Translations under genes and position numbers: made by a program | Virus record (IMG/VR): IMGVR_UViG_3300010403_000705 | Location: 62,001-126,000 of that record | Length of the DNA: 64,000 bases | Reading direction: 5' to 3' (one strand) | Part shown: positions 45,779-64,000 of the stretch, in pieces | Position numbering within the stretch: position 1 is the first letter of the stretch | How the letters are laid out: each line of letters starts with the position of its first letter | Notes under the pieces: generated by a model | Database searches by the model: none | The model's input: the letters and a program-made list of their open reading frames with translations, nothing else | Told to the model about the DNA's origin: nothing

Positions 45779-46234
45779 ATGTCAAAATTTTCAATAGATT
45801 ACTCAAGGTTAGAAAATAAAATTTACAAAAAAGCTTATAGACTTAAGGATGTAAAAGATCAGCTTGAAACGGTTGCTTTTGATGTAGTAAGATTTAAAGA
45901 CGGTGATAAGGGTGCGGATCTATGGCAAGTTCAAAGTTCTGATGATGGAGATTACATAGTGTCTTTATACCAACAGGACGAGGAAAAAACGGCTGCTTTA
46001 TGGGATGTAACAATAAGTAAAGTAGCAGGTGATTTACAAATTTCCTATAAAGGAGATCCGTTAGTAAAGATTACTTCTTCTAAATTGGGTATACCTAGTG
46101 AACAATTGATTAAAGTAAAAGATTACTTACCAGCTAGACTAGCAGAGAACAAAAAATTGGTCAAATCCTTATTAAATGAATTGCCAAATGCTGTTAAACA
46201 AGCTGTATTAAATAAATATCCAGAGTTGGTCTAA
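45779..46234 (+). CDS. hypothetical protein, morphogenesis cluster
   Basis: 151 aa, GGAG RBS; KKAY and EEKTA motifs. Confidence 0.65.
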   Translation: MSKFSIDYSRLENKIYKKAYRLKDVKDQLETVAFDVVRFKDGDKGADLWQVQSSDDGDYIVSLYQQDEEKTAALWDVTISKVAGDLQISYKGDPLVKITSSKLGIPSEQLIKVKDYLPARLAENKKLVKSLLNELPNAVKQAVLNKYPELV

Positions 46235-46252
46235 TAACATATAGGATGCTAA

Positions 46253-47878
46253 ATGAGTCTCGAAAAAATTCAGCAATTAGTAAGTTCTCTAGCTAAATCA
46301 CTAGATGATAATGAAAAATTAGCTACCCCCATTCTAGCAGCTAAATTAGCTAAGTATGTGGATGTTTACCCATATGATCAAACACTTGGTTCTATGTCAA
46401 GAGTTATTGAAAAAATGGCATCTAATAATACAATTTTTATTAAAAGATCAGATTTTAAATCATTATATAATAAATTGTATACAAGAAATACAAAAATAGC
46501 TGAGCTTTTTCAAGATGAACTTGGTATTGCTAATAACGAAGAATCTAATATCAAGACTTATGAAAGAGATGATGCTGCGCAAATAAATCCATATCAAGTA
46601 GCCGATCCTATTTTATCCAACGCTCTAAATAGTATATTTGATGGCTCTCCAGTGAAAATGTATTCACAGTCATTAGCTAATCAAGCATTAAAATCTGTCA
46701 CATCTACTTTAGATGCATGGAATTTAAAACCCTCTTCATTATTGATAAATGATGGTAATGATAAATTTTTAATGATTAAAGCCGATTATGAAACGCCTAA
46801 GGGTGTAACAAGTTTTTACGTACCTATAGAAATACATAATAATAAGATATCTGAAGCCTCTGTTTTTATGGGTAATTCAGGTCCGCAGGATTTAAATTAT
46901 ACTAATATAAAATCTTATATTACTTCTAATGCAGGCAGTAAACTAAAAGCTACTGGAACTACTATATTAGGACTATTAACAAATGCATATTCTGAAGGTA
47001 GAGAAATAAGCAATGCAGAATTGGCACTGACTAAATTAAATGCCACCAGGCAAAGTCAATCAGAATTTTTCCAGAATCAAATAGTAGGACAGAAAATAGC
47101 AGAGGCATCTACGGTAGATGTAAAAATTCCAAAATATATAATTCCTGAAATGGATAAAAACCATTTTGAGACAACCCTTAATTCCCCCGTTGGTATTGCT
47201 TCTTTTCAGTTTGGCGACGAAAAAGTAAAAATTGGCAGAGAACATATTGTAAGAGAATTAACATCTTATGGACATAAAAATGTGCAAGTAAAGGTTAATG
47301 GAAATGATGATAATACCATTTTTTATGCAGTAGCTTTAGATGCAGGAAGAGTAGGTTTTGTTGTACCCATGAAATTGTTTGAAGGAAAATTATCTAAACC
47401 CTCAGTATTGTTATGTAATGGAACTATATTTTCTTTTAGTAAAGAAGGCGTAAATCAATTATATGTTAATAATCAATCTGATTTTAAGGTAGCAGCAGCA
47501 GCTTCTCCATTATATAATCTTAAACCAAGTGATTTAATTAATAATATTAAGTTAGCATTACAAAGCGGCAATCACGAAAAAGCTGAAGATGCTTTAAATG
47601 TATTAGCAAATTCTGGTGATAATAAAGCGTATGCCATTGGTTTTCAAGCATTTATACAAGGATTATCATTTAATAAGAATGCTTCTAATAACAAGACTAA
47701 AACCTGTGAAATGATAGTTAAGAATGCATCTAGCGAACATCCAATTTGCGCCCATACAGGATTACCAGTTCATAAAACTTATATAGATAAAGATGGTAAT
47801 TGTAGACCGTTATACAGAAAAGGTATGGAAGAGGGATATGAGGGAGCTACCTTCATGAATCATAAGATATTTGGATAA
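46253..47878 (+). CDS. hypothetical protein, probable virion protein with duplicated domain
   Basis: 541 aa; two similar modules (GVTSFYVPIEI..NKI..ASV / GRVGFVVPMKL..GKL..PSV). Confidence 0.65.
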   Translation: MSLEKIQQLVSSLAKSLDDNEKLATPILAAKLAKYVDVYPYDQTLGSMSRVIEKMASNNTIFIKRSDFKSLYNKLYTRNTKIAELFQDELGIANNEESNIKTYERDDAAQINPYQVADPILSNALNSIFDGSPVKMYSQSLANQALKSVTSTLDAWNLKPSSLLINDGNDKFLMIKADYETPKGVTSFYVPIEIHNNKISEASVFMGNSGPQDLNYTNIKSYITSNAGSKLKATGTTILGLLTNAYSEGREISNAELALTKLNATRQSQSEFFQNQIVGQKIAEASTVDVKIPKYIIPEMDKNHFETTLNSPVGIASFQFGDEKVKIGREHIVRELTSYGHKNVQVKVNGNDDNTIFYAVALDAGRVGFVVPMKLFEGKLSKPSVLLCNGTIFSFSKEGVNQLYVNNQSDFKVAAAASPLYNLKPSDLINNIKLALQSGNHEKAEDALNVLANSGDNKAYAIGFQAFIQGLSFNKNASNNKTKTCEMIVKNASSEHPICAHTGLPVHKTYIDKDGNCRPLYRKGMEEGYEGATFMNHKIFG

Positions 47879-47881
47879 AAT

Positions 47882-48733
47882 ATGAGAATATTAAGGTTAG
47901 CTGAATTACTTGTTTTAAAACATGCAGATACATCTCCCCAACAACTAGAAACCAGTCTTCGTAAAGACATTCATGTTTTGTGGGACTATCCAAATAAAAT
48001 TTACAATATATTAAGAGCTTGTGCCGAGTCACATCCTAAAAATCCTAAAAGCCCACATCAAGTTAAAGCTGTGGAAGGTTTTAAATTTTGTCAAGAACTA
48101 TTAGTAATGATAGATTATTTACAATCTAATGTAGATACTATTCCATTAGGTCAAATAAGAGAAATTTTAAATAAAATAGTACTTCTTATTAAAAATAACA
48201 TTAATTTAAAATTTAATGCTAATGGAAAACCAGATGAAGAGGGGGAAAAGGCATCAGTACAATTTCCACATGTTTCTGAATTAATTTTCGAAATGATACC
48301 TGTTACCACTAAACATACTAGAACATTGCGAGACCAACAATTTAATAAAGTTAAAACTGGTTTTTCGAGAATTCTCAGTCTTTCTCTCAGTATGTTAGAA
48401 AAAATTTCAAAGTTAGAAATGTTGGTACCTGAAAAATTTCAATATGCAAATGTTACTGATATTGATATTGATCAAGAGCTTCCAAGTAGATTTACACCAA
48501 ATAGAACTACACTATCGGTATATGATATAATAGATTTCATTAGGCAACATGGGTTAGAATATGGTATATCTACTACAGAAGATTGGGCAACAGTATTTAG
48601 AGATGACCCGCAATTAAAAGAAGATATAACTACTGTTATTAATGCTATTAACAGAGGACATTATCCTAGTGGTTCTGCTGACATTAAAATGGAAATAGCC
48701 AGAATTCTAAAAGAACATGAAGAAAGAAAATAA
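47882..48733 (+). CDS. hypothetical protein, morphogenesis cluster
   Basis: 283 aa; N-terminal LVLKHA. Confidence 0.6.
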   Translation: MRILRLAELLVLKHADTSPQQLETSLRKDIHVLWDYPNKIYNILRACAESHPKNPKSPHQVKAVEGFKFCQELLVMIDYLQSNVDTIPLGQIREILNKIVLLIKNNINLKFNANGKPDEEGEKASVQFPHVSELIFEMIPVTTKHTRTLRDQQFNKVKTGFSRILSLSLSMLEKISKLEMLVPEKFQYANVTDIDIDQELPSRFTPNRTTLSVYDIIDFIRQHGLEYGISTTEDWATVFRDDPQLKEDITTVINAINRGHYPSGSADIKMEIARILKEHEERK

Positions 48734-48756
48734 AAATTTTTAAGTAATGAGGGAAT

Positions 48757-49467
48757 ATGAGAATTTCAGAAATGTTACAAGCCATTGCGTCATGGCTAGA
48801 AAGTCCAGATAATGAAGCATTACTTTTAGCAGAATATGATGAGGATTGTTTAAAAGTGGTAGCAGAATCTTGTGTAGAGGCTGCTGCTGCTTTAAAAAAA
48901 GCAGCGTATAAGGTTGAAACAATTGAGCCCGCCGAACAGTCTCATATAACCTCTGAATCACTTCAAGGATTAGCTCAAATAGCAAATGCATTTGATACTT
49001 CTGGAGATATAAATTTAAAAAAACAAGCTTCTGTTATAGATGAATTATTGTTAACCATTGCTGCGCCACCTAATGCTCAAGCGTCTCGTAAAGATCTAGA
49101 AGATAACAGGATCGAAGAGTTAAAGAAAAAATATGAAAATCCACGTAAAGAGTTAGAAAAAACCAATAAAATTGCAGACTCTGAAAAAGGTATTGAAAAA
49201 AGCAAAATGACTAAACAATATTCTATTTTGGAAGCTCCTTTGAGCTCAAGATATTGCCCAGATCATGCTGGTGCGCAAATTGCTCGTATAGGCGAGCATC
49301 TATGGCAATGCGAACTAGACAAAAAAATCTATAATTTTGAAACTGGATTCGAATTAAATAATGGAACAAAAGTTCCGGGCGGTGATGTTTCTCAACAAAC
49401 ACAGGGATTAAATGTTCCTTCACATACTATCTTCGATACTAGAGAAGGTAGATTAGGAAATAATTAA
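48757..49467 (+). CDS. hypothetical protein, morphogenesis cluster
   Basis: 236 aa; LKKQAS, CPDH motif. Confidence 0.65.
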   Translation: MRISEMLQAIASWLESPDNEALLLAEYDEDCLKVVAESCVEAAAALKKAAYKVETIEPAEQSHITSESLQGLAQIANAFDTSGDINLKKQASVIDELLLTIAAPPNAQASRKDLEDNRIEELKKKYENPRKELEKTNKIADSEKGIEKSKMTKQYSILEAPLSSRYCPDHAGAQIARIGEHLWQCELDKKIYNFETGFELNNGTKVPGGDVSQQTQGLNVPSHTIFDTREGRLGNN

Positions 49468-49482: not shown

Positions 49483-50238
49483 ATGAACAAGAATGCTTTA
49501 AAAAAAATATTGGACCATCCAGATAAAGATGAAATTATATCTAAATTAGTTATTGGTATTCCGTCTAAAAGTATACATGATTGGTTAGAATCTAAATATA
49601 CCAATATAAATGAGGCAAAATTTGTTATTGCGGAAAAGTCCATTAAATCTTTTAAAGATAATTATTTAGATCTTTATAGCATCATTCAGGAAGATTTAAT
49701 AAAAACCAAATCAGCATTAATAAATAATACTCAAGATAATCTGCAACTTTCTATTCAAAATCTGCCAACATATAAAAATATTATTTTAAAATCTGCCGAA
49801 GAAGAGTTAGATATTAGGCAAGTTATTAAAAGAATGGTTGTGGGATTAGAAACACGTTTCTCACAAGTATTCGATGAAATACAAGAAGATCCGCGAAATA
49901 TTAATACTAGAGTGGATAGATTAGTAATTGAATATGCGGAAGTTATAAGTAATTTATTAGATAAGTGTCATAAATTTACAGAGCAGCCAGCAAATCAAGT
50001 AATTCAACATAATGTTACTTTACAAGTAGTAGATCAGCATATTTCTGTATTTCATGATGTGATTAAAGAAGTTTTGTCACAAATGGATTTAGAAACTTCT
50101 TTATATTTTATGGAAGTTTTTAATGAAAAAATGGCTAAATTAAAAGCTCCTGATAAAGATATGCCTATTAGTTCAGAAATCAGATTAGCAGAAGCTAAAT
50201 TACTTAATGAAACAATTAACAAAAAAATCAATGAGTGA
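49483..50238 (+). CDS. hypothetical helical protein, possible terminase small subunit
   Basis: N-terminal HTH-like HPDKDEIISKL..G...I..WL then coiled coils; lies upstream of terminase/portal. Confidence 0.35.
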   Translation: MNKNALKKILDHPDKDEIISKLVIGIPSKSIHDWLESKYTNINEAKFVIAEKSIKSFKDNYLDLYSIIQEDLIKTKSALINNTQDNLQLSIQNLPTYKNIILKSAEEELDIRQVIKRMVVGLETRFSQVFDEIQEDPRNINTRVDRLVIEYAEVISNLLDKCHKFTEQPANQVIQHNVTLQVVDQHISVFHDVIKEVLSQMDLETSLYFMEVFNEKMAKLKAPDKDMPISSEIRLAEAKLLNETINKKINE

Positions 50239-52088
50239 ATTTTATGACAAGTACTAAACACAAACCAGAATTAAAACCTGATATACCATATTCTGAAATT
50301 GTACATAGTACTCGTGTACCAGTAGAAGATGAAATCTTAAAAGATCCTGATGTTGCTGGAAAAATTGATAAATTATTAAATTTTTTTAATGAAACAGGAA
50401 TAAGGTATGGGGATTTTGATATTGATCCTGAGCAGGATCCACTAAAAGGGCTGAGAAGAACTGACACTTATAATAAAAAAGCTTATCCTAACACAGATTA
50501 TTATGTACATATTCCTGGACAGCATAACACTGAGAAATGGTTACAAGCAGTTAAAGAAGTTTATTATAAAGAAAGAAATGGATCTAATCGTGTATTAGCT
50601 ATTAGACAGGCTACTAATGGTTGGAATCCTATGGAAACTTATGATTTTTTGAATTGGTTAAGATATTATGAAGGTGCTACACATTTAAAATATAAGTTTG
50701 CTCAATTATGGTATGAAAACGGAGCTCCTGGATATTTTCTTCATGTTAAACCAGATGCCAAAAAAGAAGAGCCTTCTGTTGAAGGAAAAGATATTGATAT
50801 GGCACGAGACGCTATTTCTAACGAAATGTCTTCATCAGAAAAAAAACACATAATAGAGAAACAGAGAAACAAAATTGTTGGAAGGCTAGATTCTGCAGAA
50901 AAATTACTAAGGACACGTGATGGTCAAGTTTTTGCAGGAAAAGAATTTGAAACATTATTGGAAGCTATTTATCAATTAAAGAAAAAGCTACAAATGGTAA
51001 ACAAAATTAGCACTTCTACAAAAATATATGATGATATGATTGTAAGAGAAGCTAATATTTTATCCAAAAAAGGTTTTGTTAAAGCGGGAAATTTATTGTT
51101 ATCATTATCACAAGCTAATAATCCTCCTCCTGAAGGTTTGGGTAACACTGTTAACAAATCACAAATATCGTTAACTCCAGTATCACCAGTACCCCCGCAA
51201 CAGGGCGCTGGTTCGGCAGGCGGCTTACCTTCTATGGGACCAGGTATACCTCAAACTCTGCCAGAAAATTCATCTAGTGAACTGCCGCCAAAAGGAATAA
51301 GTGAATTCTTAGAGAATTTAGATGTTGGGTCAAAAGATAATAATTCTTCAGATACATTGGAGATACAAGATACTTTAGATATTAATGACCTTGAAGAAGA
51401 AGTTCTCGTTACCCATGCACAAGATGTTAAACCACCTACTGTGCCAATAAACACTCCTTCTAATAAAACAGATAAAATAGATAAGCCATTGGAAATCAAA
51501 CAAAATTCACCAGAAGTAAATGGTGACAAATTATCTCCACAAAATAGAGATTTTGATAACATGATTGATTCTCTTTTTTCACACATCAGTATTAATGATA
51601 TTGTAGCGAAATTAGAAGATATTTCTAAAATATATAAAACTAGAGAAATACCGAGACAATTATCTATCATAGATATGATGTTAGATAGTAAAGGGTTAGC
51701 GGCATATTTCCCTTCATTGTCGGAAGCCATTAATAAAGCGCTAGAATCTAATAACTATATCTCTACCCGCATAGATGATATTTTAGCTAAACTAACTGGT
51801 GGTATAGAAGGTAGAGATCTTGATTTGAAGGGTGAAATGACCCCAAAAACAAATTCTCCAGAAATTGAAAATCTGAAACAAAATTTGAAATTACAAGAAG
51901 ACAAAGAAAAGGCTAGAAAGAAATTAAGAAAAGAGCAATCAGATCAAGAATTAGATTTATCTAATTCGCCTAAGGAAACTCCTGAAATAGATATTGAAGA
52001 AGATCTAAGTCGACCTCTCCCTTCTAAAGAACAAACTGCTAGTCCTCCAGCCGCTCCTGTCGCTAAACCAACACCAGTTACTAAATAA
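50235..52088 (+). CDS. hypothetical protein with Pro-rich linkers, probable head/scaffold-associated protein
   Basis: 617 aa; several K-x-A sites; low-complexity linkers. Confidence 0.6.
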   Translation: MNFMTSTKHKPELKPDIPYSEIVHSTRVPVEDEILKDPDVAGKIDKLLNFFNETGIRYGDFDIDPEQDPLKGLRRTDTYNKKAYPNTDYYVHIPGQHNTEKWLQAVKEVYYKERNGSNRVLAIRQATNGWNPMETYDFLNWLRYYEGATHLKYKFAQLWYENGAPGYFLHVKPDAKKEEPSVEGKDIDMARDAISNEMSSSEKKHIIEKQRNKIVGRLDSAEKLLRTRDGQVFAGKEFETLLEAIYQLKKKLQMVNKISTSTKIYDDMIVREANILSKKGFVKAGNLLLSLSQANNPPPEGLGNTVNKSQISLTPVSPVPPQQGAGSAGGLPSMGPGIPQTLPENSSSELPPKGISEFLENLDVGSKDNNSSDTLEIQDTLDINDLEEEVLVTHAQDVKPPTVPINTPSNKTDKIDKPLEIKQNSPEVNGDKLSPQNRDFDNMIDSLFSHISINDIVAKLEDISKIYKTREIPRQLSIIDMMLDSKGLAAYFPSLSEAINKALESNNYISTRIDDILAKLTGGIEGRDLDLKGEMTPKTNSPEIENLKQNLKLQEDKEKARKKLRKEQSDQELDLSNSPKETPEIDIEEDLSRPLPSKEQTASPPAAPVAKPTPVTK

Positions 52089-52091
52089 TAT

Positions 52092-52865
52092 ATGAAACTT
52101 CGTGAATTACTTTTTCAAATGAAAGAAGTACAAAAGAAAGCAGATACTTCTGAACCTTATATTTGTGGTGGTACACCTAGAGATAAGTATTTGAAAAGAT
52201 TAGATAATATTTCTGATTTAGATATTACCACTGGAGATAAATCTGTAGACTATCTATCTCAGATGTTTGCAGAAGAATTAAAGAAAAAATATAATGTGGA
52301 CAGAAAATCTATGGAAGATGGACATAGTACTATTTTTATTGGTAACTTAAAAATAGATTTTTCATCAAATTTTAATGTACCTAATATAGATAAGATTTTG
52401 TTTAAGAAAGGTATTAATAAACCTACTGAAATGCAGAAAGAAATGTTTAGTAGAGATTTTACTTGCAATGCATTGTTACTATCACTAGATTTAGTTAATA
52501 TTATTGATCCAACACATAAAGGATTTATTGACATCAAGGAAAAAAAAATTAAAACATGCTTAAGTCCAGACATTACTTTAACTACAAATAGAAATAGGGT
52601 AGTAAGAGCTGTATATTTGGCTTCTAAATTAGGTTTTGATATTGATAGTTCAATAATAGATTATGTACGAAAAAATCCAAATACTGTAAGAATAGCTACA
52701 GAAAAATCATTAACAGATAAATTAAATGAAGCTTTTAAAAGAGATGGTGATCGTGCTAGTTATTTTCTTACCAAAATGGAGTTATGGAATTACGTACCTA
52801 TTACAGAAATAATGTATCCATTTTATAATGTACATACCAAAGGTAAATCAAATGTCACAAAATAA
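52092..52865 (+). CDS. CCA-adding/poly(A) polymerase family (class II) nucleotidyltransferase, short form
   Basis: CGGTPRD...DLDITT, SRDFTCNAL, IIDP...G..DI, R.VRA..L..KLGF. Confidence 0.85.
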   Translation: MKLRELLFQMKEVQKKADTSEPYICGGTPRDKYLKRLDNISDLDITTGDKSVDYLSQMFAEELKKKYNVDRKSMEDGHSTIFIGNLKIDFSSNFNVPNIDKILFKKGINKPTEMQKEMFSRDFTCNALLLSLDLVNIIDPTHKGFIDIKEKKIKTCLSPDITLTTNRNRVVRAVYLASKLGFDIDSSIIDYVRKNPNTVRIATEKSLTDKLNEAFKRDGDRASYFLTKMELWNYVPITEIMYPFYNVHTKGKSNVTK

Positions 52866-55876: not shown

Positions 55877-57745
55877 ATGAATGATGATAAAAAATTATTT
55901 GAAAGATTAAAAAACGATTTATTAAATATTGATCCTGTAAGTTGGACAGAGAGATATCTTACGTTAGATGGAAAACCATTTCGTTTAACAGGAAATGGTT
56001 TTAAGCCTTTTGCAGATATTTATAGATATATTGGAATTAAAGCATTAGAACCAAACGCTATGCCAATTATCCTAGTTAAGGGTCGTCAGGTTGGAGCAAC
56101 TACTATGGCAAGTGCATTAGAAATGTACTTCATGGGATCTGGTATATTCGGTAATGGTGAAAAACCTCCAATTAGAATTATTCATGCTTTTCCACAATTA
56201 GAATTAGCAGCAGCTTATTCTAAAACAAAATTAAATCAAATGATTTCCTCTTCTTTACCATTGCCTGGAGAAGATAATAAAAAAAATAATAAAACTAAAT
56301 CATATATGCAATCACTGTTAGACCAAACAAGTGCCACCAATGATTCTTTACATTTTAAACAATTTATTGGAGGAAACCATATTTGGGTAGAATCTACTGG
56401 ACTAGATGCTGATCGAATCATGGGACGTACGGCTGATGTTATTTTTTTTGACGAAGTTCAAAAAACAACAAGTCAGGCTATTGGGAATGCATTAAAAATT
56501 TTAACAACTTCTAAATACGGAAAAATAAATAAAGGCGTTCAAGTGTATTTTGGAACTCCACGTCGAAAAGGATCTGATTATCATAAGATGTGGCAAAGCT
56601 CTACTCAACAATATTTTTACCTTGGTTGTGAAAAATGTAACAAGCATTTTCCATTGTATACCCCTGGAACTGATGAATGGGAAAATATTTGGATTCATGG
56701 GTACATAGTTAAATGTACGCATTGTGGGTATGAGCAAGATAAAAGGCAAGCAGCAGAAAGAGGAAAATGGGTTGCATTAAAATCAGAAGCAAATGATGAT
56801 TGTAAAATGGTAGGTTTTCATATTAATCAATTATATATGCCTACATTTACAAAAGAAGATTTAATTAATGAAAAACCAGGTAATCATCCTATTAACACTG
56901 AACGAGTCTATAAAAATGAAGTTTTGGGAGAGTTTTATCAAGGAGATGCCTCTCCAATTACACCAGAAGAGATTAGAGAATTATGTGGAGAACCAGGGAG
57001 AAAATTTAGAGCCAGAATTGAACCTAGTAAAGAACAAATAATAGTACTAGGTATAGATTATGGTGCTAGAGCAGATTTAGAACAATTAGCTAATCCAGAC
57101 AAAGTAAAATTATCAGGTCAATCGTATAGCACCGCTGTTGTTTTAATGGCAACTGGTCCAAACTTGTTATCTATTGAATTTGCTACAAAATTCAAACGTA
57201 ATGATATGGAAAGTAAAAAAGGTTTGATTGATCAGATTATGAGACAATATAGTATACAGTTAGCAATAGGAGATATTGGTTTTTCACAAGATTTTTCGAC
57301 TATGTTACATACTTCATATGGAGACAGGTACTTAGTTTCCAGAGCTCATAATAAGGTAAATGGATATGTTAAATTTTCTGCTGATGCTTACCCAAAAGAG
57401 ATAGTTTTTGAAAGAGATCATTATATCGGTGAGTTGTATGAACAAATGAAAAAAGGAAATATAAAATTTCCTTTTGGAGATTATGAAAAATTAGCTTGGT
57501 TAATAGAACATTGTGCTAGTATGGAAATTAAACCATCCATGTCTAAATATGGGGATCATAGTATTCACTATGTAAAAGGCGGTACACCTAATGATGGTTT
57601 CATGGCTTTATTAAACGCTTACTTAGCTTATAAATTCGTTATAACTAAAGGTTTTACTAGTAATAATCCATTATTGCAACAACAAGTTTTTAAAGAAGTG
57701 AATAAACCATTAGCACTTACTGGATATATAAGCCGTAAATTTTAA
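55877..57745 (+). CDS. terminase large subunit (lambda GpA-like)
   Basis: KGRQVGATT Walker A, FFDEVQ Walker B, GTP motif, CEKC...CTHC Zn motif, GFHINQL, NEVLGEFY, nuclease GIDYG. Confidence 0.88.
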   Translation: MNDDKKLFERLKNDLLNIDPVSWTERYLTLDGKPFRLTGNGFKPFADIYRYIGIKALEPNAMPIILVKGRQVGATTMASALEMYFMGSGIFGNGEKPPIRIIHAFPQLELAAAYSKTKLNQMISSSLPLPGEDNKKNNKTKSYMQSLLDQTSATNDSLHFKQFIGGNHIWVESTGLDADRIMGRTADVIFFDEVQKTTSQAIGNALKILTTSKYGKINKGVQVYFGTPRRKGSDYHKMWQSSTQQYFYLGCEKCNKHFPLYTPGTDEWENIWIHGYIVKCTHCGYEQDKRQAAERGKWVALKSEANDDCKMVGFHINQLYMPTFTKEDLINEKPGNHPINTERVYKNEVLGEFYQGDASPITPEEIRELCGEPGRKFRARIEPSKEQIIVLGIDYGARADLEQLANPDKVKLSGQSYSTAVVLMATGPNLLSIEFATKFKRNDMESKKGLIDQIMRQYSIQLAIGDIGFSQDFSTMLHTSYGDRYLVSRAHNKVNGYVKFSADAYPKEIVFERDHYIGELYEQMKKGNIKFPFGDYEKLAWLIEHCASMEIKPSMSKYGDHSIHYVKGGTPNDGFMALLNAYLAYKFVITKGFTSNNPLLQQQVFKEVNKPLALTGYISRKF

Positions 57746-57802: not shown

Positions 57803-59626
57803 ATGGCTATAAATAAATCTACAAAAAAATGGGTTGGACCATCCAATTCAGAACAGTTTTTACAAAAAAGATCTACTGTTCCACAAGTAAGTGCCCTAAT
57901 GGCTCAAGGTATTTCGAGTGTTAGAAGAGATATTTTATCTGAAGAAGTCGATCAAGGATTTTTTAGAGACGGATCTGGTCCTTCTAATAAACAGAATGAT
58001 TTAACACATAATTCTCATGTCACCGCATCAGTAGGTGTAAAAAAATACGCACAAGTATTAAGTGGAGGTGGTAATTATCGTGGTGGTAATGGAGATACTG
58101 TTAAACAAACGCCAGAAGTATATTCTCCACTGTGGCTTAATAGTAACTTAAACCTTCCTAGAGATAGAGCAACTATTAATGCATGGTGTCGTAGTTTTTA
58201 TGCTTTAAATCCCTTCGTACATAACGCAATTAATTTACATAGTACATATCCAATTAGTAAACTAAATATTAAATGTTCGAATAAAGATATTGAAAAATTC
58301 TTCAATGATATGAGTGAAGAAATAGATTTAATGAATATTTGCGTACAAATAGCTCAAGAATATTGGTTACTAGGTGAAGCATTTGTATATTCTGAATTAG
58401 ATGAAAGTAAAGGCAAATGGAGTAGGTTATTGATTCAAAATCCTGATCATATGCTTGTTAAACGTACTGTAGTGACCACTGACCCTATAATTATGTTGCG
58501 TCCAGATGAAAATTTAAAAAACATTGTATTTTCTAATAAACCAACAGACATTGAACAACGTAAACAACTAAATCAATATATTATAGATTCTGTTAAACGT
58601 GGAGAAAATATCACACTAGATAATTTTCATGTATCTCATTTAGCAAGAAGAATTAGCCCGTATGAAATAAGAGGCACTGGTCTTCCTGTTTGTATATTTA
58701 GACAATTAATGTTATTTGATAAGTTAAGAGAATCTAAATATGCACAGGCTGATAATATGATTAATCCATTAACTCTAGTAAAAATTGGCACAGATGGACC
58801 TGAAGGCTTACATCCAACATTTGGTGATTTAGAAGCATGGAGAAATATTTTTGAAGAAGCACAATATGATAAAGATTTTAAAATCTTTACACACGCTGGT
58901 ATTGATGTGCAGAGAGTGGGGTATGGTCAAGGCATATATGATATCTCTGGAGATATCACTCAAATAATTAAAGAAATTTATGTTGGCTTACAAGTTCCGC
59001 CAGTATTGATGGATGGTGGTGCAGATACAACTTATGCTAATGGTGGTGTGGCGCTTGATGTATTAAGACAACGATACATGCAGTTCCGTAATATGATGTC
59101 TGCTTGGTTGAAAAGACAAATATTTGCTCCAATATCAAAAATTCAGGGATTTTATGATTATTCTGGTGGAGAAAAACAACTTATAGTACCAGAGATTGAC
59201 TGGAATCATATGTCATTATTTGATGCTGGTGATTATATTAATACTTTAGTTACTCTTACACAAGGTCAAGATGATCAAAAACGTGCTTCTTTACACACAT
59301 TGTATCGTTCTATGGGTCTTGAATTTGAAGATGAAAATAGAAAAATACGTAAAGAAGCAATTCAAAATGCAATTGTAAAAAAAGAAAAAATGGCTTTAGA
59401 AGCATTAGATTTAAATTCACTAAGAGCTTTAGATGAAGAAGAGGAAATTCCTCAAGCACAAACTCAACAGCCAGGAACAGAAAACGCAGTACCGGGTCAA
59501 ATGCCTTCTCCTACTAGTATGCCTGGATTAGATTTAGGTGCACCTCCTGGTATGTCAGCTTCTCCAATGCCTTCAGGACCAGCATCAGGACCTACTGATT
59601 CTGCACCTCCTCCTGTTCCCGCATAA
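57803..59626 (+). CDS. portal protein
   Basis: Directly after terminase; FYALNPFVHNAINLHSTYP, EYWLLGEAF, ISPYEIRGT; Pro-rich C-terminal tail. Confidence 0.8.
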   Translation: MAINKSTKKWVGPSNSEQFLQKRSTVPQVSALMAQGISSVRRDILSEEVDQGFFRDGSGPSNKQNDLTHNSHVTASVGVKKYAQVLSGGGNYRGGNGDTVKQTPEVYSPLWLNSNLNLPRDRATINAWCRSFYALNPFVHNAINLHSTYPISKLNIKCSNKDIEKFFNDMSEEIDLMNICVQIAQEYWLLGEAFVYSELDESKGKWSRLLIQNPDHMLVKRTVVTTDPIIMLRPDENLKNIVFSNKPTDIEQRKQLNQYIIDSVKRGENITLDNFHVSHLARRISPYEIRGTGLPVCIFRQLMLFDKLRESKYAQADNMINPLTLVKIGTDGPEGLHPTFGDLEAWRNIFEEAQYDKDFKIFTHAGIDVQRVGYGQGIYDISGDITQIIKEIYVGLQVPPVLMDGGADTTYANGGVALDVLRQRYMQFRNMMSAWLKRQIFAPISKIQGFYDYSGGEKQLIVPEIDWNHMSLFDAGDYINTLVTLTQGQDDQKRASLHTLYRSMGLEFEDENRKIRKEAIQNAIVKKEKMALEALDLNSLRALDEEEEIPQAQTQQPGTENAVPGQMPSPTSMPGLDLGAPPGMSASPMPSGPASGPTDSAPPPVPA

Positions 59627-59717: not shown

Positions 59718-60953
59718 ATGCAGAAAACTGCTCAAAAAAGAAGTCTTCTTAATAAACTAAAAGAAATGACAGATGTTGGCGGAATTGCCACTGAAAAATA
59801 TTTCAATCCAGAATTCAAAGAAATTATGGATCAATTACGCAACGTAGATGATGGTGCTAGAGCTATTGCGGCAGGTGAACAGGTAGGAGAGGCATCTGCG
59901 CCAGCAGACGCAATTAGTTTGAAAGATCTTTTAAAATCTGTTAAATCAAATATAAACAGACGTGAATATATGAAATCTGTAGCTGATTTAGGAAGATTTC
60001 ATAGAAAAATGTTTGATATTACACACTTGATATCTCTTTTTAATTCTAATGTAGATAAAATTCATGAGAGATTTTTATTTCAAGACTTAGATGAAGATAG
60101 TAAAAAACATTTACAGTATTTTAAAAGCAAATGGTCTAGTGCAAACATACATCAACCATATTTTATTAAAGAAGCTAATATACTAGATTTTTTTACTAAT
60201 ATAGCTACTGAGAGAGGTAGAGCACTTTCATCTTGGGAAAAAAGATATCCTAATAGGATAAAAAAATTAAAAACTGATGTAACTACTATATTAGAAGCTT
60301 CTGAAAAAAATTTAAATATATTATTGTCAGTTTTAAAAGATATGGCTAAAGCTAGAGCTTCTAGGAATCCAGACAGCTATATTGCATCTGCTAGTAAAAT
60401 TACTAGCAATTTTAAAAATTATGATGATATGTTCAAAAAATTCTATGATGAACATGTTAAAGGATTTTTAGAAAAACAAGAATTCTTTGCGCCTACTAAA
60501 ACAGATACCTCAGAAAAAACAGAAGATTTGTCAAAAAAAGATATTCAAGTAGAAACAAAAAATACTACCAATAATAATGTGCCCTTAATAAATCCTACAA
60601 ATATTATCAAACCAATAATACCTTCATTACCACCCATACCACAATTTCCCGGTCGTTCTACTTCAGTTTCAGAAACTGCTAAAAATTTAACAGTAAATCC
60701 AAATGATTTTTCAAAAACAATAGAGGAGGGTGCCCCACAATTTGAAGAAGATAAATTTGATGAAACAGCTACTATTCCAAATAGTAAAGTAGCTCCAGCA
60801 CATCAGAAATTTATGAATTCTTTAGTCTCAATAAGTGAAGAATCGCCTATTTTATTATCAGCCCATATAAATAGATACGCAAAGGCTATTCTTCCTAGAG
60901 ATCCAGAAACCGCAATAAAACTATTTAAATTAGTTAAATCTATTAAGGATTAA
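59718..60953 (+). CDS. hypothetical protein, probable internal head protein
   Basis: 411 aa; MQKTAQ and FIKEAN motifs. Confidence 0.6.
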   Translation: MQKTAQKRSLLNKLKEMTDVGGIATEKYFNPEFKEIMDQLRNVDDGARAIAAGEQVGEASAPADAISLKDLLKSVKSNINRREYMKSVADLGRFHRKMFDITHLISLFNSNVDKIHERFLFQDLDEDSKKHLQYFKSKWSSANIHQPYFIKEANILDFFTNIATERGRALSSWEKRYPNRIKKLKTDVTTILEASEKNLNILLSVLKDMAKARASRNPDSYIASASKITSNFKNYDDMFKKFYDEHVKGFLEKQEFFAPTKTDTSEKTEDLSKKDIQVETKNTTNNNVPLINPTNIIKPIIPSLPPIPQFPGRSTSVSETAKNLTVNPNDFSKTIEEGAPQFEEDKFDETATIPNSKVAPAHQKFMNSLVSISEESPILLSAHINRYAKAILPRDPETAIKLFKLVKSIKD

Positions 60954-60954
60954 T

Positions 60955-61938
60955 ATGGGTGCCAGAGTTAAACGTGTTAAAACAAATGTATCTACAGAGC
61001 AAATAACGCAAGCTGTTATTAATGCATGGGTAGAATTATTTCATGTTGTACCCTCTAAAGAACAAATAGCAATGGTTTTAGCTCAAAATGCATTAGAAAC
61101 TGGTCATAGAAAAAGTATGTGGAATTATAATATTGGTAATATTACGACAGATGGTAAAGGCGGATATGACTTTTTTGATGATTTACCAACAGACGAACAA
61201 GTGAAACCTGGTGTATGGAAGAAAATGAGTCTTAAATATAGAGCATATCCTTCTTTAAAAGAAGGTATGCAAGATTATTTAAAATTTATAAGTGGAAAAA
61301 AATATGCCAATGCTTGGCAGCATATACTACATCCTAATCCAGCAGCTTTTTCTAAAGCCTTAAAACAGTCTGGTTATTACACAGCAAATGAGGCTCCATA
61401 CACAAAAACTTTAACAAAATTATATAATCAATATTCGAAATCTAAGATTGATAAAATACAACCTGTTTTCGATAAAAATGTTATACCCCATAATGATAAC
61501 CAATTAAATCACATTTTAGATGATTATTTACAAATGGTAGCAGCTTCCGAAAAAAATAATAAAAAAATATACAAAAAACTATTACCATTTAATAATATAT
61601 TAGTAAAAATAAATTCTATCGATTATAATAATTCTATAGAATTTGCCAGGATATTATGTTCGGCACTAGAAGAAGAATTAATGGCAACTGCATATACACA
61701 TACAGATGGTAACTCTATAGAAATAGAATGTGTTATTCCTGGTCCTGCACAAGATTGTCTATATGCTACGATGCAACTAACTAGTTCAGTAGCAGATGCT
61801 TTTAGAGTTGCCACTAAAAAAATTGGTAGTATAGATGTAACTACTCAGTGTACGCTAAACAAAAAATCTTCTTATAAACAAATAGGATTCAAATCTGCTG
61901 AATGTCAACATAGAAAATTTTTAATGAAATTTATTTGA
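60955..61938 (+). CDS. GH73/FlgJ-like glucosaminidase fused to unknown C-terminal domain
   Basis: AQNALETG, NIGNI, YRAYPSL.EG..DY, LK.SGYYTA. Confidence 0.8.
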   Translation: MGARVKRVKTNVSTEQITQAVINAWVELFHVVPSKEQIAMVLAQNALETGHRKSMWNYNIGNITTDGKGGYDFFDDLPTDEQVKPGVWKKMSLKYRAYPSLKEGMQDYLKFISGKKYANAWQHILHPNPAAFSKALKQSGYYTANEAPYTKTLTKLYNQYSKSKIDKIQPVFDKNVIPHNDNQLNHILDDYLQMVAASEKNNKKIYKKLLPFNNILVKINSIDYNNSIEFARILCSALEEELMATAYTHTDGNSIEIECVIPGPAQDCLYATMQLTSSVADAFRVATKKIGSIDVTTQCTLNKKSSYKQIGFKSAECQHRKFLMKFI

Positions 61939-61945
61939 GGTAATA

Positions 61946-62329
61946 ATGGTAACAGAAATAGAAATTCAAGATTTAGTGCAAAAATTTGGAGGGGCTGAAA
62001 AAACATTTGCTGAATTTTTAGGAGAATTATTTAAAGATAAATTCATAGAAATTTATTTCGGAGAATCATATGAAGAAGTAAGCACAGAACAAGTCTCTAC
62101 TTCTTATCCAGCCGTTTTTTGTGGAAAAGTAATAGCAGCTTATAAAACATGCTTGATTGTTAATGGGGCATATGTAAATAATAAAAAAATGCAGATTGGC
62201 AACATAATTTTTATAAACGAAAGTGCTATTAAAGCTGTAACAGAGATTGACGGTAAAGGCATTTTAGAAGAGTTATTATTAAGAAGCAAAGAATCTTTAA
62301 ATGTAAAAACAAATTTTATAAATAAATAA
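61946..62329 (+). CDS. hypothetical protein
   Basis: 127 aa, GAGG RBS. Confidence 0.6.
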   Translation: MVTEIEIQDLVQKFGGAEKTFAEFLGELFKDKFIEIYFGESYEEVSTEQVSTSYPAVFCGKVIAAYKTCLIVNGAYVNNKKMQIGNIIFINESAIKAVTEIDGKGILEELLLRSKESLNVKTNFINK

Positions 62330-62333
62330 TAAC

Positions 62334-63074
62334 ATGTATAACCTAGATCAAATTACGAAGATGGCGTATATGTATGAAAATGTATGCTTATCTTTTACTA
62401 AAGAAAGTCGTATTGTAAAATTACCTAACGATAAGTACCGTGTACTTTCTGAAAAAGGTAAAAATCTAGGTACTTCTAATTCAAAAGCCGAGGCTAAAAC
62501 AAGATTAAAACAAATAGAATATTTTAAGCATAAAGATGATAATAAGGCAGAAGATAGTCAACATTTAGACTTAACTAAAACAGATGAATTTTCTTACTCA
62601 GCTATTATGCGATGTTTAAGACAACAAGCTTCAAAAGAACAAGTGGTGGATTTTTTGAAACTCTTTAAGAAAGAGTTTGATAGAGCTGTGAAAAATAAGT
62701 TACAAAGACCAGAAAAAATAGCTCTACAAAATTCTTTAATAAAATTAAACAAGATTCATCCAATAAAAATAAATAGAAAATTAGTTAAAACAGCGGCTAT
62801 TAGTGAATTAGGAGATCCTATATGGGTTGGAAAATATCTAGCGGATATTATTAGATTTAGTTTAAATAGAATATCTGCTGACAAACGTCCTCTGGCATTG
62901 AATAGATTAAGAAATAAAATTTATAATATGAATGAAAATGAGATTGGATCCAAGAATATGCCAGCCACCTCTTCTATGGGGCAATCCATTACTTTCGTCA
63001 AACATGTGCTATTTAATCATGATCCACAATATGTACGAGCTGTGTTAAATAACATAACTAGGAATTTGGTATGA
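62334..63074 (+). CDS. hypothetical protein, probable head protein
   Basis: YRVLSEKGKNLGT..SK.EA..RLKQIEYFKH module; ITKMA, FTKES, LVKTA motifs. Confidence 0.6.
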   Translation: MYNLDQITKMAYMYENVCLSFTKESRIVKLPNDKYRVLSEKGKNLGTSNSKAEAKTRLKQIEYFKHKDDNKAEDSQHLDLTKTDEFSYSAIMRCLRQQASKEQVVDFLKLFKKEFDRAVKNKLQRPEKIALQNSLIKLNKIHPIKINRKLVKTAAISELGDPIWVGKYLADIIRFSLNRISADKRPLALNRLRNKIYNMNENEIGSKNMPATSSMGQSITFVKHVLFNHDPQYVRAVLNNITRNLV

Positions 63075-63802
63075 TTCAAAAGCTACAAAAAGTTACTAAC
63101 GGTTTATATCGAGGTGGCGCCCCAACTCCTAAAGATGTGCTATGGCTCAAAGAGAATTTACATATTAATAAAATAATAAGTTTAGATCAAATGGCAGGTA
63201 CTAAAATTAATCGTGTATGTGAGATGTTACATATACAACATATTAATTTACCTATTGATAGCTCTCGCCAATCATTATTAAATGTGCTACAACATGATTT
63301 AAAAAAATTATTATTAAACAATGGACCTACTTATATCCATTGTCAAGCAGGCAAAGATCGCACAGGTTTAATTATCGCTTTATTCAAATGTAAATATATG
63401 AATGTTGATCCAGAAGTATCTATCAAAGAAGCTAAATCTTTAGGTTTTGGAATTGGAATTGATCCTCGTATTACTCAATTATATGAAAAGATAATTAGAA
63501 AATGCAAACCATCTAGAGATATAAATAATTCAGATATAGTCTCTAATGAAAGAGAATATAAAAACGATAACCAGGATTCTTTCTTAGAAACAACGTATCA
63601 AGGATCTTTTTCAACATATTTAGATACCACTATACAAAATTCTATGGATGATGCATATAATTATATGAACGTACAAGTCTATGAGCCAATAAAAATGCAT
63701 CAATCTAAGAATAATATACCGCAAGTAGGAATATTTAATAACGATGCTGGAGTAAAAGGTTTTGGTCCTACTGAAAATTATGGTGGGTTTTTTTATGATT
63801 AA
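63071..63802 (+). CDS. protein tyrosine/dual-specificity phosphatase
   Basis: LYRGGAP, IISL, P-loop HCQAGKDRTG. Confidence 0.88.
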   Translation: MIQKLQKVTNGLYRGGAPTPKDVLWLKENLHINKIISLDQMAGTKINRVCEMLHIQHINLPIDSSRQSLLNVLQHDLKKLLLNNGPTYIHCQAGKDRTGLIIALFKCKYMNVDPEVSIKEAKSLGFGIGIDPRITQLYEKIIRKCKPSRDINNSDIVSNEREYKNDNQDSFLETTYQGSFSTYLDTTIQNSMDDAYNYMNVQVYEPIKMHQSKNNIPQVGIFNNDAGVKGFGPTENYGGFFYD

Positions 63803-64000
63803 AAAATCTTATTCAGTTCAAATGACATATGATGTGTCAGATTCAGAGAAGCTACAAGCAGAGCGCGCCTTATTATGTTTTAATCATGTATTAAAATTAT
63901 TGGACATTGCTTCTAATCATTTAGATATTATGAAAACGCCATTCAAAAATAATCCAGAGATGTCTCCCGAAGAAGTAATGAAAGCTCGTGCGGCTATTAG
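63795..64000 (+). CDS. hypothetical protein, 3' truncated by window edge
   Basis: MIKKSYSVQMTYDVSDSEK... open to the end of the window. Confidence 0.6.
   Translation, partial: MIKKSYSVQMTYDVSDSEKLQAERALLCFNHVLKLLDIASNHLDIMKTPFKNNPEMSPEEVMKARAAI

What the first reader, a model, noticed from the sequence alone, without database searches (positions are those of the whole stretch)
45779..64000. Recurrent K-x-[A/S/G] motif across head-cluster proteins: candidate prohead-protease cleavage code
Seen: IYKKAY and EEKTAA (45779); FKVAA and FNKNAS (46253); LVLKHAD (47882); LKKQAS (48757); YNKKAY and YKFAQ (50235); QNKKAY and LIKIAI (52852); IIKEGQ (53632); NKKIAS (54553); VKKYAQ (portal N-terminus); MQKTAQ and FIKEAN (59718); ITKMAY, FTKESR and LVKTAA (62334); MIKKSY (63795). 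Two distant genes also have it: MIKVAG (6450) and ITKIAQ (1228-1587). Sites lie at N-termini or between folded segments. Established: T4 gp21 (I/L-x-E) and phiKZ gp175 (S/A/G-x-E) cleave many head proteins at such repeated short motifs. Inference: this phage uses a different, Lys-x-Ala-type specificity, and the motif predicts which hypothetical proteins enter the capsid.
Basis: partly seen in the sequence, partly recalled or inferred. Interest (0 to 1): 0.75.

Follow-up and report, generated by a model that had tools for sequence, protein, structure and literature searches.

The report
Lys-x-Ala motif in megaphage head proteins
A short Lys-x-Ala sequence recurs, and is conserved, in the head-assembly proteins of this 433-kb relative of Bacillus phage G; it is most likely the site where the phage's capsid-maturation protease cuts them, though no cleavage has been shown.

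Summary
All the quoted strings are in the sequence. The motif as written, K-x-[A/S/G], is not enriched over composition in 45779-64000 (116 observed, 104.2±8.8 expected, p=0.105). K-x-S and K-x-G carry no signal.

K-x-A does. It is the most enriched of 315 X-x-Y patterns in the whole head module (104 vs 68.2, z=4.9). The module runs past the window end to the capsid gene. Tail genes and the rest of the genome show no excess. Other spacings, the reverse order, R-x-A and K-x-L are flat.

K-x-A starts within the first 30 residues in 17 of 32 head proteins against 43 of 429 others. In diverged relatives it persists as an island in variable sequence.

A protease with the T4 gp21 / herpesvirus assemblin fold lies 0.7 kb past the window. 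It is fused to a long, probably scaffold-like tail and carries conserved sites of its own. Cultured phage G repeats the enrichment (z=5.1).

Best reading: Lys at P3, Ala/Gly at P1, cleavage after Ala. This is inferred. A docking motif that is not cut is the main rival. It would be a new variant of a known kind, testable in phage G.

The parts
45779..46234 (+). 151-aa hypothetical protein with conserved K-x-A sites at aa 17 (KKA, nt 45827-45835), 70 (KTA, nt 45986-45994) and 81 (KVA, nt 46019-46027)
   Evidence: K and A/G/S kept in 100%, 100% and 94% of 16 orthologues, above flank identity. No PHROG or Pfam match.
46253..47878 (+). 541-aa hypothetical protein. Conserved K-x-A at aa 22, 31, 81 and 412 (FKVAA, nt 47486-47494); aa 475 (FNKNAS, nt 47675-47683) is 79% kept.
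   Evidence: 14 orthologues. 18 K-x-[ASG] observed vs 10.6 expected.
47882..48733 (+). 283-aa hypothetical protein.
   Evidence: K and [AGS] kept together in 0 of 6 orthologues.
48757..49467 (+). 236-aa hypothetical protein. K-x-A at aa 47 (nt 48895-48903) and aa 89 (LKKQAS, nt 49021-49029) are conserved, but within conserved sequence.
   Evidence: 0.79 and 0.82 kept; flank identity 0.55 and 0.72.
49483..50238 (+). 251-aa hypothetical protein. Conserved island K-S-A at aa 76 (nt 49708-49716).
   Evidence: 0.94 kept vs flank identity 0.45.
50235..52088 (+). 617-aa hypothetical protein. YKFAQ at aa 154 (nt 50694-50702) is invariant; [KR]-K-A-Y-P-N at aa 81 (nt 50475-50483) is mostly kept; K-A-G at aa 283.
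52828..53562 (+). 244-aa hypothetical protein. Its N-terminal module N-K-K-A-Y-F-Q-G-T-E-E-P-T-P (aa 13, nt 52864-52872) also occurs twice in the protease-scaffold protein. LIKIAI at aa 127 (nt 53206-53214).
   Evidence: 0.84 and 0.97 kept. The tail of the module co-varies within genomes.
53632..54549 (+). 305-aa hypothetical protein. IIKEGQ at aa 208 (nt 54253-54261); most orthologues read LVKEAQ.
   Evidence: 1.00 kept vs flank identity 0.60.
54553..55206 (+). 217-aa hypothetical protein. LKKDAV at aa 34 (nt 54652-54660) is a conserved island. NKKIAS at aa 96 (nt 54838-54846) is partly kept (K 0.52, A 0.90).
55877..57745 (+). Large terminase subunit. It is not expected inside the capsid and has no conserved K-x-A island, only K-x-G inside conserved folded sequence.
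   Evidence: phrog_675, 1.9e-61; GpA_ATPase.
57803..59626 (+). Portal protein. VKKYAQ at aa 81 (nt 58043-58051) is invariant in 65 orthologues. It aligns with K55-M-A-S of phage G portal gp14, exactly where similarity between the two portals begins.
   Evidence: phrog_16240, 9e-51.
59718..60953 (+). 411-aa hypothetical protein. MQKTAQ at aa 3 (nt 59724-59732). FIKEAN at aa 151 (nt 60168-60176) lies at the border between a variable N-terminal part and a conserved C-terminal part.
   Evidence: 0.96 kept vs flank identity 0.36 at aa 151.
60955..61938 (+). Glucosaminidase-domain protein, possibly a virion-associated lysin. Conserved K-I-G at aa 289 (nt 61819-61827).
   Evidence: (PF01832, 3.1e-10).
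62334..63074 (+). 246-aa hypothetical protein. FTKESR at aa 23 (nt 62400-62408; orthologues have K-x-A) and LVKTAA at aa 152 (nt 62787-62795) are conserved islands. ITKMAY at aa 9 is partly kept.
63762..64000 (+). Start of a 227-aa protein that runs off the window. MIKKSY (nt 63801-63809) is conserved; orthologues mostly have K-K-A or K-K-G.
   Evidence: K 1.00, A/G 0.72.
6450..7907 (+). Distant 485-aa gene. MIKVAG at aa 1-6; the one distinct orthologue reads MIKTAK.
   Evidence: Only one distinct orthologue sequence, so this is weak.
1228..1587 (-). Distant 119-aa gene. An N-terminal helix ends in IITKIAQ, followed by a Pro-rich stretch. The orthologue reads ILTKLAQ, then an indel, then PP.
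   Evidence: Only one orthologue.

Best explanation
The window comes from a 433-kb phage related to Bacillus phage G. Its head-assembly module starts at about window position 45779 and runs about 18 kb past the window end, to the major capsid gene.

Just past the window (genome 126727-130407) lies a 1226-residue protein. Residues about 40-245 form a serine protease of the T4 gp21 / herpesvirus assemblin fold. The rest looks like a scaffold-type extension.

I propose that this protease recognises [L/F/I/M]-[V/I]-K-x-[A/G]. Lys would sit in the S3 pocket and the small residue in S1, with cleavage after Ala/Gly. This is the same P3-x-P1 layout as T4 (L/I-x-E), phiKZ (S/A/G-x-E) and herpesvirus assemblin ((V/L/I)-x-A|S).

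Predicted cuts:
- short N-terminal peptides of about 5-35 residues from the capsid protein and many internal head proteins;
- about 80 residues from the portal;
- several internal sites, including in the protease's own polyprotein.

Shown here: the motif's enrichment, spacing, position and conservation; the protease fold and its location. Inferred: that the motif is cleaved, by this protease, and at which bond.
For: 1. Enrichment is specific. K.A is rank 1 of 315 X.Y patterns in the head module (104 vs 68.2, z=4.9). Tail module z=0.12; rest of genome ratio 0.95.

2. Spacing and identity are specific. KA z=-1.1, K..A 0.3, K...A 0.4, A.K -0.5, R.A -0.3, E.A -0.1, K.L -0.05.

3. There is an N-terminal bias: 17/32 vs 43/429 proteins, p=1.3e-8. 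Control patterns are flat.

4. The motif is conserved. In an unbiased scan of all X.Y pairs on orthologue alignments, K.A is the top 'conserved island' (14/84 vs a 4.8% background, p=5e-5), and only at gap 2. In alignments at 22-70% identity, K-x-A/G stays put while a Pro/Gly/Ala-rich linker after it varies freely.

5. The family-weighted logo of 43 conserved sites is: -2 L/F/I/M, -1 V/I, K, x, A 0.74 / G 0.22, +3 Q/A/E/S.

6. A protease is present. phrog_18299 'head maturation protease', E=1.2e-11. The AF2 model has pLDDT 95.7. Best structural match is T4 gp21 (5jbl, Z=10.6, rmsd 2.5 Å over 129 residues), followed by herpesvirus proteases at Z 7-9.7. H133 and S184 are invariant.

7. The protease carries its own sites. 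K35-x-A and K42-x-A-P lie just before the catalytic domain and are shared with phage G gp19. Across 116 diverse homologues, sites persist at aa 5, 35, 415, 514, 667, 850, 986 and 1185.

8. The portal site falls exactly where similarity to the phage G portal begins.

9. Phage G replicates the enrichment. Head genes gp4-gp27: K.A 58 vs 31.6±5.2, z=5.1. Neighbouring gp28-gp64: z=0.7. The commonest form there is K-x-A-S. Apart from portal, protease and capsid, those proteins share no BLAST similarity with ours.

10. Enzymes in the module that should not be packaged (terminase, nucleotidyltransferase, HNH, phosphatase) have no conserved K-x-A island.
Against: - There are no protein-level data. Cleavage, the scissile bond and the responsible enzyme are all inferred.
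- The complex prediction of the protease domain with capsid residues 1-50 gave no answer.
- The protease matches neither Pfam S77 nor S78, and no solved structure by sequence.
- I did not check by superposition that H133 and S184 fall on the gp21 catalytic residues.
- Several sites sit 3-5 residues from the initiator Met (MQKTAQ, MIKVAG, MTFIKLG). Cutting there would remove almost nothing.
- Some conserved sites precede long conserved modules (KKAYFQGGGGVNEPTP) or a hydrophobic segment. That could point to binding rather than cutting.
- Phage G's capsid protein lacks the N-terminal extension that carries our LVKYAA.
- The orthologues are related sequences, so conservation counts are not independent events.
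- I set the right-hand boundary of the head module after seeing the genes.
Confidence: 0.6

Rival explanations
1. K-x-A is the core of a docking or capsid-targeting peptide. It would be a short helix-end motif by which internal proteins, portal and capsid protein bind the scaffold or the protease-scaffold protein during prohead assembly, without being the bond that is cut.
For: - Many sites end a conserved amphipathic N-terminal helix.
- The 16-residue module N-K-x-[AG]-Y-[FY]-Q-G-GGGVNEPTP is conserved well beyond K-x-A and co-varies between proteins of one genome, as a binding epitope might.
- Sites 3-5 residues from the N-terminus make little sense as cleavage sites.
Against: - Many conserved sites are internal, and several occur per protein. 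In hypervariable linkers the only residues kept are K and A/G. That fits enzyme recognition of an extended strand better than a helical interface.
- An i,i+2 pair with A/G alternation is unusual for a helix contact.
- The P3-x-P1 layout matches all characterised proteases of this fold (established knowledge).
- In T4 the targeting peptide is itself removed at such a site, so the two readings are not exclusive.
Confidence: 0.2
2. The motif is recognised by something other than the module's own protease. Candidates are a host or second phage protease (phage G also encodes ClpP/ClpX), or a modifying enzyme acting on the Lys.
For: - Some phages use host enzymes for head-protein processing; staphylococcal phage 80alpha uses host Prp (recalled from memory).
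- Phage G particles contain ClpP and ClpX (bioRxiv 10.1101/2024.12.16.628780).
- Nothing here links the motif to the gp21-fold protease except co-location and the sites on the protease itself.
Against: - The enrichment is confined to the head module. It is shared by phages from very different environments, and so probably different hosts.
- The protease-scaffold protein itself carries the densest set of conserved sites.
Confidence: 0.08
3. There is no specific function. The excess would be a by-product of composition, helical or coiled-coil sequence, or shared ancestry of paralogous head proteins.
For: - The genome is AT-rich, so Lys-rich. The loose motif is expected about 100 times in the region by chance.
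- Designed coiled coils with KKIA repeats were the only, and non-significant, PDB sequence hits to the protease N-terminus.
Against: - Within-protein shuffles remove composition.
- Helical periodicity would also raise K..A, K...A, K.L and E.A, which are flat.
- Tail fibres and other helical proteins show nothing.
- The enrichment recurs in phage G proteins with no detectable similarity to ours.
- K.A is the top conserved island among all patterns.
Confidence: 0.07

Closest known systems
T4 gp21 prohead protease and its L/I-x-E cleavage code
   Same: - It is the best structural match to the protease domain (5jbl, Z=10.6).
- One protease would process many head proteins at a short motif with two fixed positions two residues apart.
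- Short N-terminal peptides are removed, and the protease processes itself.
   Different: - The motif here is K-x-A/G, not hydrophobic-x-Glu.
- No sequence match to Pfam S77.
- The protease is fused to a ~1000-residue extension and has a Cys-rich zinc-ribbon-like insert.
- Cleavage is not demonstrated.
phiKZ gp175 (S/A/G-x-E) and SPN3US gp245 (A-x-E) in giant phages
   Same: A jumbo phage in which many internal head proteins and the portal carry repeated sites, sometimes several per propeptide (PMC10052503).
   Different: - Different lineage: the capsid protein is related to phage G, not phiKZ.
- Different residues at P3 and P1.
- Those motifs were mapped by mass spectrometry; this one is only predicted.
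Herpesvirus assemblin, which cleaves (V/L/I)-x-A|S (specificity recalled from memory)
   Same: - Same fold (VZV Z=9.7, PRV 9.2, HCMV about 8).
- A small P1 residue (Ala) is proposed.
- In phage G the commonest form is K-x-A-S, i.e. Ala followed by Ser.
- The protease is fused to a scaffold.
   Different: - Lys rather than a hydrophobic residue at P3.
- Many substrates rather than two sites in one polyprotein.
- The third catalytic residue is unknown.
Bacillus phage G gp19 (candidate prohead protease) and its head module
   Same: - Closest cultured relative: capsid protein 53% identical, portal 33%, protease domain 34%.
- It shares the two K-x-A sites ahead of the protease domain and the portal site.
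- It shows the same K.A enrichment.
   Different: - gp19 is a stand-alone 300-residue protein, not a 1226-residue fusion.
- The phage G capsid protein lacks the 44-residue N-terminal extension.
- I found no published cleavage motif for phage G in the papers I could read. The 2020 J Mol Biol paper on its capsid is not held.
Protease-scaffold fusions or nested genes (lambda C/Nu3, P2 gpO, HK97-type proteases)
   Same: - Protease at the N-terminus of a long assembly protein.
- The gene lies between the portal and capsid genes.
   Different: - Much longer (1226 residues).
- About eight conserved candidate self-cleavage sites.
- No match to Pfam S78.

Membership tests
gp21 / assemblin-fold capsid maturation serine proteases | The characteristic fold | tested here: met
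   AF2 model pLDDT 95.7. T4 gp21 Z=10.6, rmsd 2.5 Å over 129 residues; herpesvirus proteases Z 7-9.7; Foldseek probability 0.97-0.99.
gp21 / assemblin-fold capsid maturation serine proteases | Catalytic His followed by catalytic Ser at the structurally equivalent positions | tested here: inconclusive
   H133 and S184 are invariant in 69 diverse homologues and in phage G gp19, in the right order and about 51 residues apart. I could not inspect a residue-level superposition on gp21.
gp21 / assemblin-fold capsid maturation serine proteases | Sequence membership in a curated family (Pfam S77 or S78) | tested here: not met
   No match at E<=1 in the genome, nor in the protein itself. Only PHROG 18299 'head maturation protease' matches, at 1.2e-11.
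gp21 / assemblin-fold capsid maturation serine proteases | Gene placed between the portal and major capsid genes | tested here: met
   Portal at genome 119803, protease at 126727, capsid protein at 140840.
gp21 / assemblin-fold capsid maturation serine proteases | Proteolytic activity | not testable with these tools
   Needs purified protein.
Motif-coded multi-substrate prohead proteolysis (T4, phiKZ, SPN3US type) | A short motif with two fixed positions (P3 and P1) recurs in many head proteins and is rarer elsewhere | tested here: met
   K.A rank 1 of 315 in the head module, z=4.9; flat in the tail and the rest of the genome.
Motif-coded multi-substrate prohead proteolysis (T4, phiKZ, SPN3US type) | Sites are conserved in orthologues and lie near N-termini or at domain borders | tested here: met
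Motif-coded multi-substrate prohead proteolysis (T4, phiKZ, SPN3US type) | The protease carries its own sites (self-processing) | tested here: met
   K35-x-A and K42-x-A-P lie before the domain, and about eight conserved sites lie in the extension. Shown at sequence level only.
Motif-coded multi-substrate prohead proteolysis (T4, phiKZ, SPN3US type) | Glu at P1 | tested here: not met
   The head-specific pattern is K-x-A. I.E is raised in both the head (z=3.1) and the tail (z=3.8), so it is not head-specific.
Motif-coded multi-substrate prohead proteolysis (T4, phiKZ, SPN3US type) | Mature N-termini mapped to the motif by protein chemistry | not testable with these tools
   No proteomic data are reachable. 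The papers held give no cleavage sites for phage G.

The most novel reading that the evidence does not exclude
Phage G-like megaphages, a large environmental clade with genomes of 350-480 kb, would share a cleavage code that can be read from sequence: [hydrophobic]-[V/I]-K-x-A/G, cut after the small residue. The enzyme would be a gp21/assemblin-fold protease with Lys at P3 and Ala at P1, a specificity closer to herpesvirus assemblin than to any characterised phage protease. The 1100-1600-residue protease-scaffold polyprotein would cut itself at about eight sites. The code would identify more than 15 unannotated proteins as packaged head components, including two genes far from the module.
Probability: 0.5. 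Interest if true: 0.7.

Novelty: new variant of a known kind. Interest (0 to 1): 0.6.

Why it matters
Head modules of megaphages consist almost entirely of proteins with no known function. A validated cleavage motif would show, from sequence alone, which of them are loaded into the capsid and trimmed. It would also give their mature ends for cryo-EM model building.

It would add a fourth, chemically different specificity (basic P3, small P1) to a protease fold shared by phages and herpesviruses.

The motif is shared with Bacillus phage G, the only long-cultured megaphage. The prediction can therefore be tested directly, possibly by re-searching mass-spectrometry data that already exist.

Tried and rejected
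- **Nucleotide search of the phage collection** with 6 kb of the region: no match.
- **Pfam S77 and S78 searches** of the genome: nothing.
- **First AF2 run** of protease residues 1-330 with 19 close orthologues: pLDDT 46.8, unusable. It was rescued by a 69-sequence alignment from the representative search.
- **Profile searches against PDB sequences:** only non-significant coiled-coil or zinc-ribbon hits.
- **Complex prediction** of the protease domain with capsid residues 1-50: 'no answer'. It is not used as evidence either way.
- **Literature:** the 2020 phage G capsid paper is not held. The papers I could read on phage G, SPN3US and jumbo phages give no K-x-A motif.
- **More distant capsid relatives** (Pseudomonas Lu11, Erwinia phB78, Mycobacterium Myrna): no obvious N-terminal K-x-A. 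The motif appears confined to the phage G-like clade.
- **Substitution spectra** at motif K and A are circular, because the sites were selected for conservation. I do not use them.
- **K-x-A-Q**, the tighter motif I noticed first (30 observed vs 19 expected genome-wide, 10 of them in 112-140 kb), turned out to be one flavour of the broader K-x-A/G pattern.

Full report
**What the window is.** The window is bases 62001-126000 of a single 432,844-bp IMG/VR virus record. CheckV rates it 97% complete. G+C is 0.27-0.33, and 592 of my 670 ORF calls are on the + strand. The closest cultured relative is Bacillus phage G:
- major capsid protein 53% identical over residues 45-327;
- portal 33% identical;
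- protease domain 34% identical.

Hundreds of environmental contigs, several of 350-480 kb, encode capsid proteins 87-95% identical to this one.

**What lies in 45779-64000.** Only two genes are recognisable head or packaging genes: the large terminase (55877-57745, phrog_675, 1.9e-61) and the portal (57803-59626, phrog_16240, 9e-51). The stretch also holds:
- a PolyA_pol-type nucleotidyltransferase (52092-52865);
- an HNH endonuclease on the minus strand (55196-55849);
- a glucosaminidase (60955-61938);
- a tyrosine phosphatase (63071-63802).

The remaining proteins match nothing. The module does not stop at the window end. A 1226-residue protein at genome 126727-130407 has a head-maturation-protease match over residues 103-215 (phrog_18299, 1.2e-11). 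The major capsid protein is at genome 140840-141853 (phrog_2522, 8e-76). Between them lie five unannotated proteins.

**The observation as written.** Every quoted string is present. K-x-[A/S/G] is nevertheless a very loose pattern in a Lys-rich proteome. In the region I count 116 occurrences against 104.2±8.8 in within-protein shuffles (p=0.105). The rest of the window gives 226 vs 231, and the rest of the genome 1622 vs 1691.

**The narrower motif is real.** I scored all X-x-Y pairs against within-protein shuffles.

| Region | K-x-A observed vs expected | z | Rank |
|---|---|---|---|
| Head module, genome 107779-144387 | 104 vs 68.2 | 4.9 | 1 of 315 |
| Part beyond the window, 126-144.4 kb | 55 vs 34.3 | 3.98 | 1 of 255 |
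| Tail module | 47 vs 46.3 | 0.12 | 139 of 319 |

In the rest of the genome the ratio is 0.95. K-x-G and K-x-S are not enriched anywhere.

The signal needs exactly this spacing, order and pair of residues. KA, K..A, K...A, A.K, R.A, E.A and K.L all have z between -1.1 and 0.4; K.V (1.2) and AK (-2.6) are not enriched either. This argues against an amphipathic-helix or coiled-coil artefact.

K-x-A starts within the first 30 residues of 17 of 32 head-module proteins, against 43 of 429 others (p=1.3e-8). Control patterns show nothing.

**Conservation.** I fetched about 190 related loci, using the capsid protein, the portal and two other window proteins as queries. I aligned the orthologues of each head-module protein.

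I then scanned every X-x-Y pair for 'conserved islands'. An island has both residues kept in at least 80% of orthologues, at least 0.25 above the identity of its flanks. K-x-A ranks first: 14 of 84 occurrences against a background of 4.8% (p=5e-5). The effect is seen only at gap 2.

In the most diverged families (22-70% identity) the picture is plain. An N-terminal helix of 15-25 residues ends in K-x-A or K-x-G. It is followed by a Pro/Gly/Ala-rich linker of free length and sequence.

The family-weighted logo of 43 conserved sites is: L/F/I/M at -2, V/I at -1, K, any residue, A (0.74) or G (0.22), then Q/A/E/S.

- 13 are conserved islands: IYKKAY, EEKTAA, FKVAA, YKFAQ, QNKKAY, LIKIAI, IIKEGQ, VKKYAQ, MQKTAQ, FIKEAN, FTKESR, LVKTAA and MIKKSY;
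- 5 are partly conserved or sit in conserved sequence: FNKNAS, LKKQAS, YNKKAY, NKKIAS and ITKMAY;
- 1 is not conserved: LVLKHAD.

The two distant genes keep their motif in the only orthologue found. They are also among just 12 of 515 non-head proteins that match a stricter N-terminal pattern, against 9 of 33 head proteins.

The enzymes in the module that should not be packaged have no conserved K-x-A island.

**The protease.** A profile of residues 40-245 finds 1993 relatives in the 1.84-billion-protein library. Most are fusions of 1100-1600 residues. With 69 of them as the alignment, AlphaFold2 gives a confident model (pLDDT 95.7). Its best structural match is the T4 capsid assembly protease gp21 (Z=10.6, rmsd 2.5 Å over 129 residues). 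Herpesvirus proteases follow at Z 7-9.7.

H133 and S184 are invariant, in the order expected for this fold. I could not check the superposition residue by residue. There is no sequence match to Pfam S77 or S78, nor to any solved structure.

The protein carries the motif itself. K35-x-A and K42-x-A-P lie just ahead of the catalytic domain and are shared with phage G gp19. Across 116 full-length homologues averaging 35% identity, sites persist at residues 5, 35, 415, 514, 667, 850, 986 and 1185. This is what a self-processing protease-scaffold polyprotein would look like.

**Comparison with phage G.** The two portals become similar exactly at our K81-Y-A-Q and phage G's K55-M-A-S. That fits removal of a non-conserved N-terminal propeptide.

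Phage G head genes gp4-gp27 share no BLAST similarity with ours apart from portal, protease and capsid. They still repeat the enrichment: 58 K-x-A against 31.6±5.2 (z=5.1, none of 2000 shuffles reach it). The next 37 genes give z=0.7. The commonest form in phage G is K-x-A-S.

Phage G's capsid protein lacks the 44-residue extension that holds our LVKYAA.

More distant capsid relatives (Lu11, phB78, Myrna) show no such N-terminal motif.

**How it most likely works.** All characterised proteases of this fold read two positions two residues apart and cut after the second. T4 reads L/I-x-E, phiKZ S/A/G-x-E, and SPN3US A-x-E (PMC10052503). Herpesvirus assemblin reads (V/L/I)-x-A|S, which I recall from memory.

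K-x-A fits that template, with Lys at P3 and Ala/Gly at P1. I therefore propose cleavage after the small residue. The predicted cuts are:
- short N-terminal peptides from the capsid protein (about 26 residues) and many internal proteins;
- about 83 residues from the portal;
- the polyprotein cut into pieces.

The motif's statistics, the protease fold and the gene order are shown. Everything about catalysis is inferred. The one in-silico docking attempt gave no answer.

**Rivals.**
- The main rival is a docking or capsid-targeting peptide that is not itself cut. In its favour are the longer conserved module N-K-x-[AG]-Y-[FY]-Q-G-GGGVNEPTP, which co-varies within genomes, and the sites only 3-5 residues from the initiator Met.
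- A host or second protease is possible but less likely, because the protease-scaffold protein is itself the richest in sites.
- A compositional or structural artefact is largely excluded.

**Caveats.**
- Genes were called as longest ORFs, so some start codons are uncertain.
- The orthologue sequences are related, so conservation counts are not independent events.
- The right-hand limit of the head module and the -2/-1 preferences were defined after looking at the data.
- I could not read the 2020 paper on the phage G capsid. By my recollection of its abstract it names a candidate prohead protease, so a published cleavage motif cannot be fully excluded.

**Verdict.** The pattern that counts is K-x-A (sometimes G) with hydrophobic residues just upstream. 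It is specific to the head module of phage G-like megaphages. It is best explained as the recognition site of their gp21/assemblin-fold maturation protease. This would be a new specificity within a known kind of system, unproven, and directly testable in phage G.

Noticed in passing
Relatives P0021, P0022, P0097 (homologues of the protease at genome 126727, locus L001:1727-5407): In some relatives the protease domain is split by an intein (Hint, Intein_splicing and LAGLIDADG domains). It is inserted near residue 104, just before the invariant N-x-N-G-D motif. The window's phage has no intein there.
   Followed up: partly
L001:1727-5407 (genome 126727-130407), residues 194-212: The protease domain has an invariant Cys cluster (C194, C199, C210; H212 is invariant among close relatives and phage G gp19) after the putative catalytic Ser. 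It gives weak zinc-ribbon-like hits, and I do not recall such an insert in T4 gp21 or assemblin.
   Followed up: no
window 52864-52905; L001 residues 415-430 and 514-530 of the 1226-aa protein: A 16-residue module N-K-x-[A/G]-Y-[F/Y]-Q-G, followed by either GGGVNEPTP or TEEPTPG, occurs in two different proteins (three copies). The variant of its tail tends to be the same in all copies within one genome, which suggests concerted evolution or a shared partner.
   Followed up: partly
L001:13653-14888 (genome 138653-139888), residue 159: A conserved K-x-A directly precedes a hydrophobic, membrane-span-like segment in an otherwise unannotated head-module protein.
   Followed up: no
window 45203-45646: A small sigma-factor-like protein sits immediately upstream of the head module, as gp3 (annotated as a sigma factor) does in phage G. 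It could be a late-gene regulator.
   Followed up: no
window 55196-55849 (minus strand): An HNH endonuclease gene, one of the few minus-strand genes, is wedged directly upstream of the large terminase. It has 10 K-x-[ASG] against 3.3 expected, but none is conserved.
   Followed up: partly
window 52092-52865, 60955-61938, 63071-63802: A PolyA_pol/CCA-type nucleotidyltransferase, a glucosaminidase and a tyrosine/dual-specificity phosphatase are embedded among the head genes. Phage G likewise has an endolysin between its protease and capsid genes.
   Followed up: no
window 24974-25954: A 326-residue ORF has only 1.8% Lys, in a proteome that averages 7.8%.
   Followed up: no
whole record: IMG/VR classes the 433-kb record as a 'provirus', although it is rated 97% complete and resembles the lytic phage G.
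   Followed up: no
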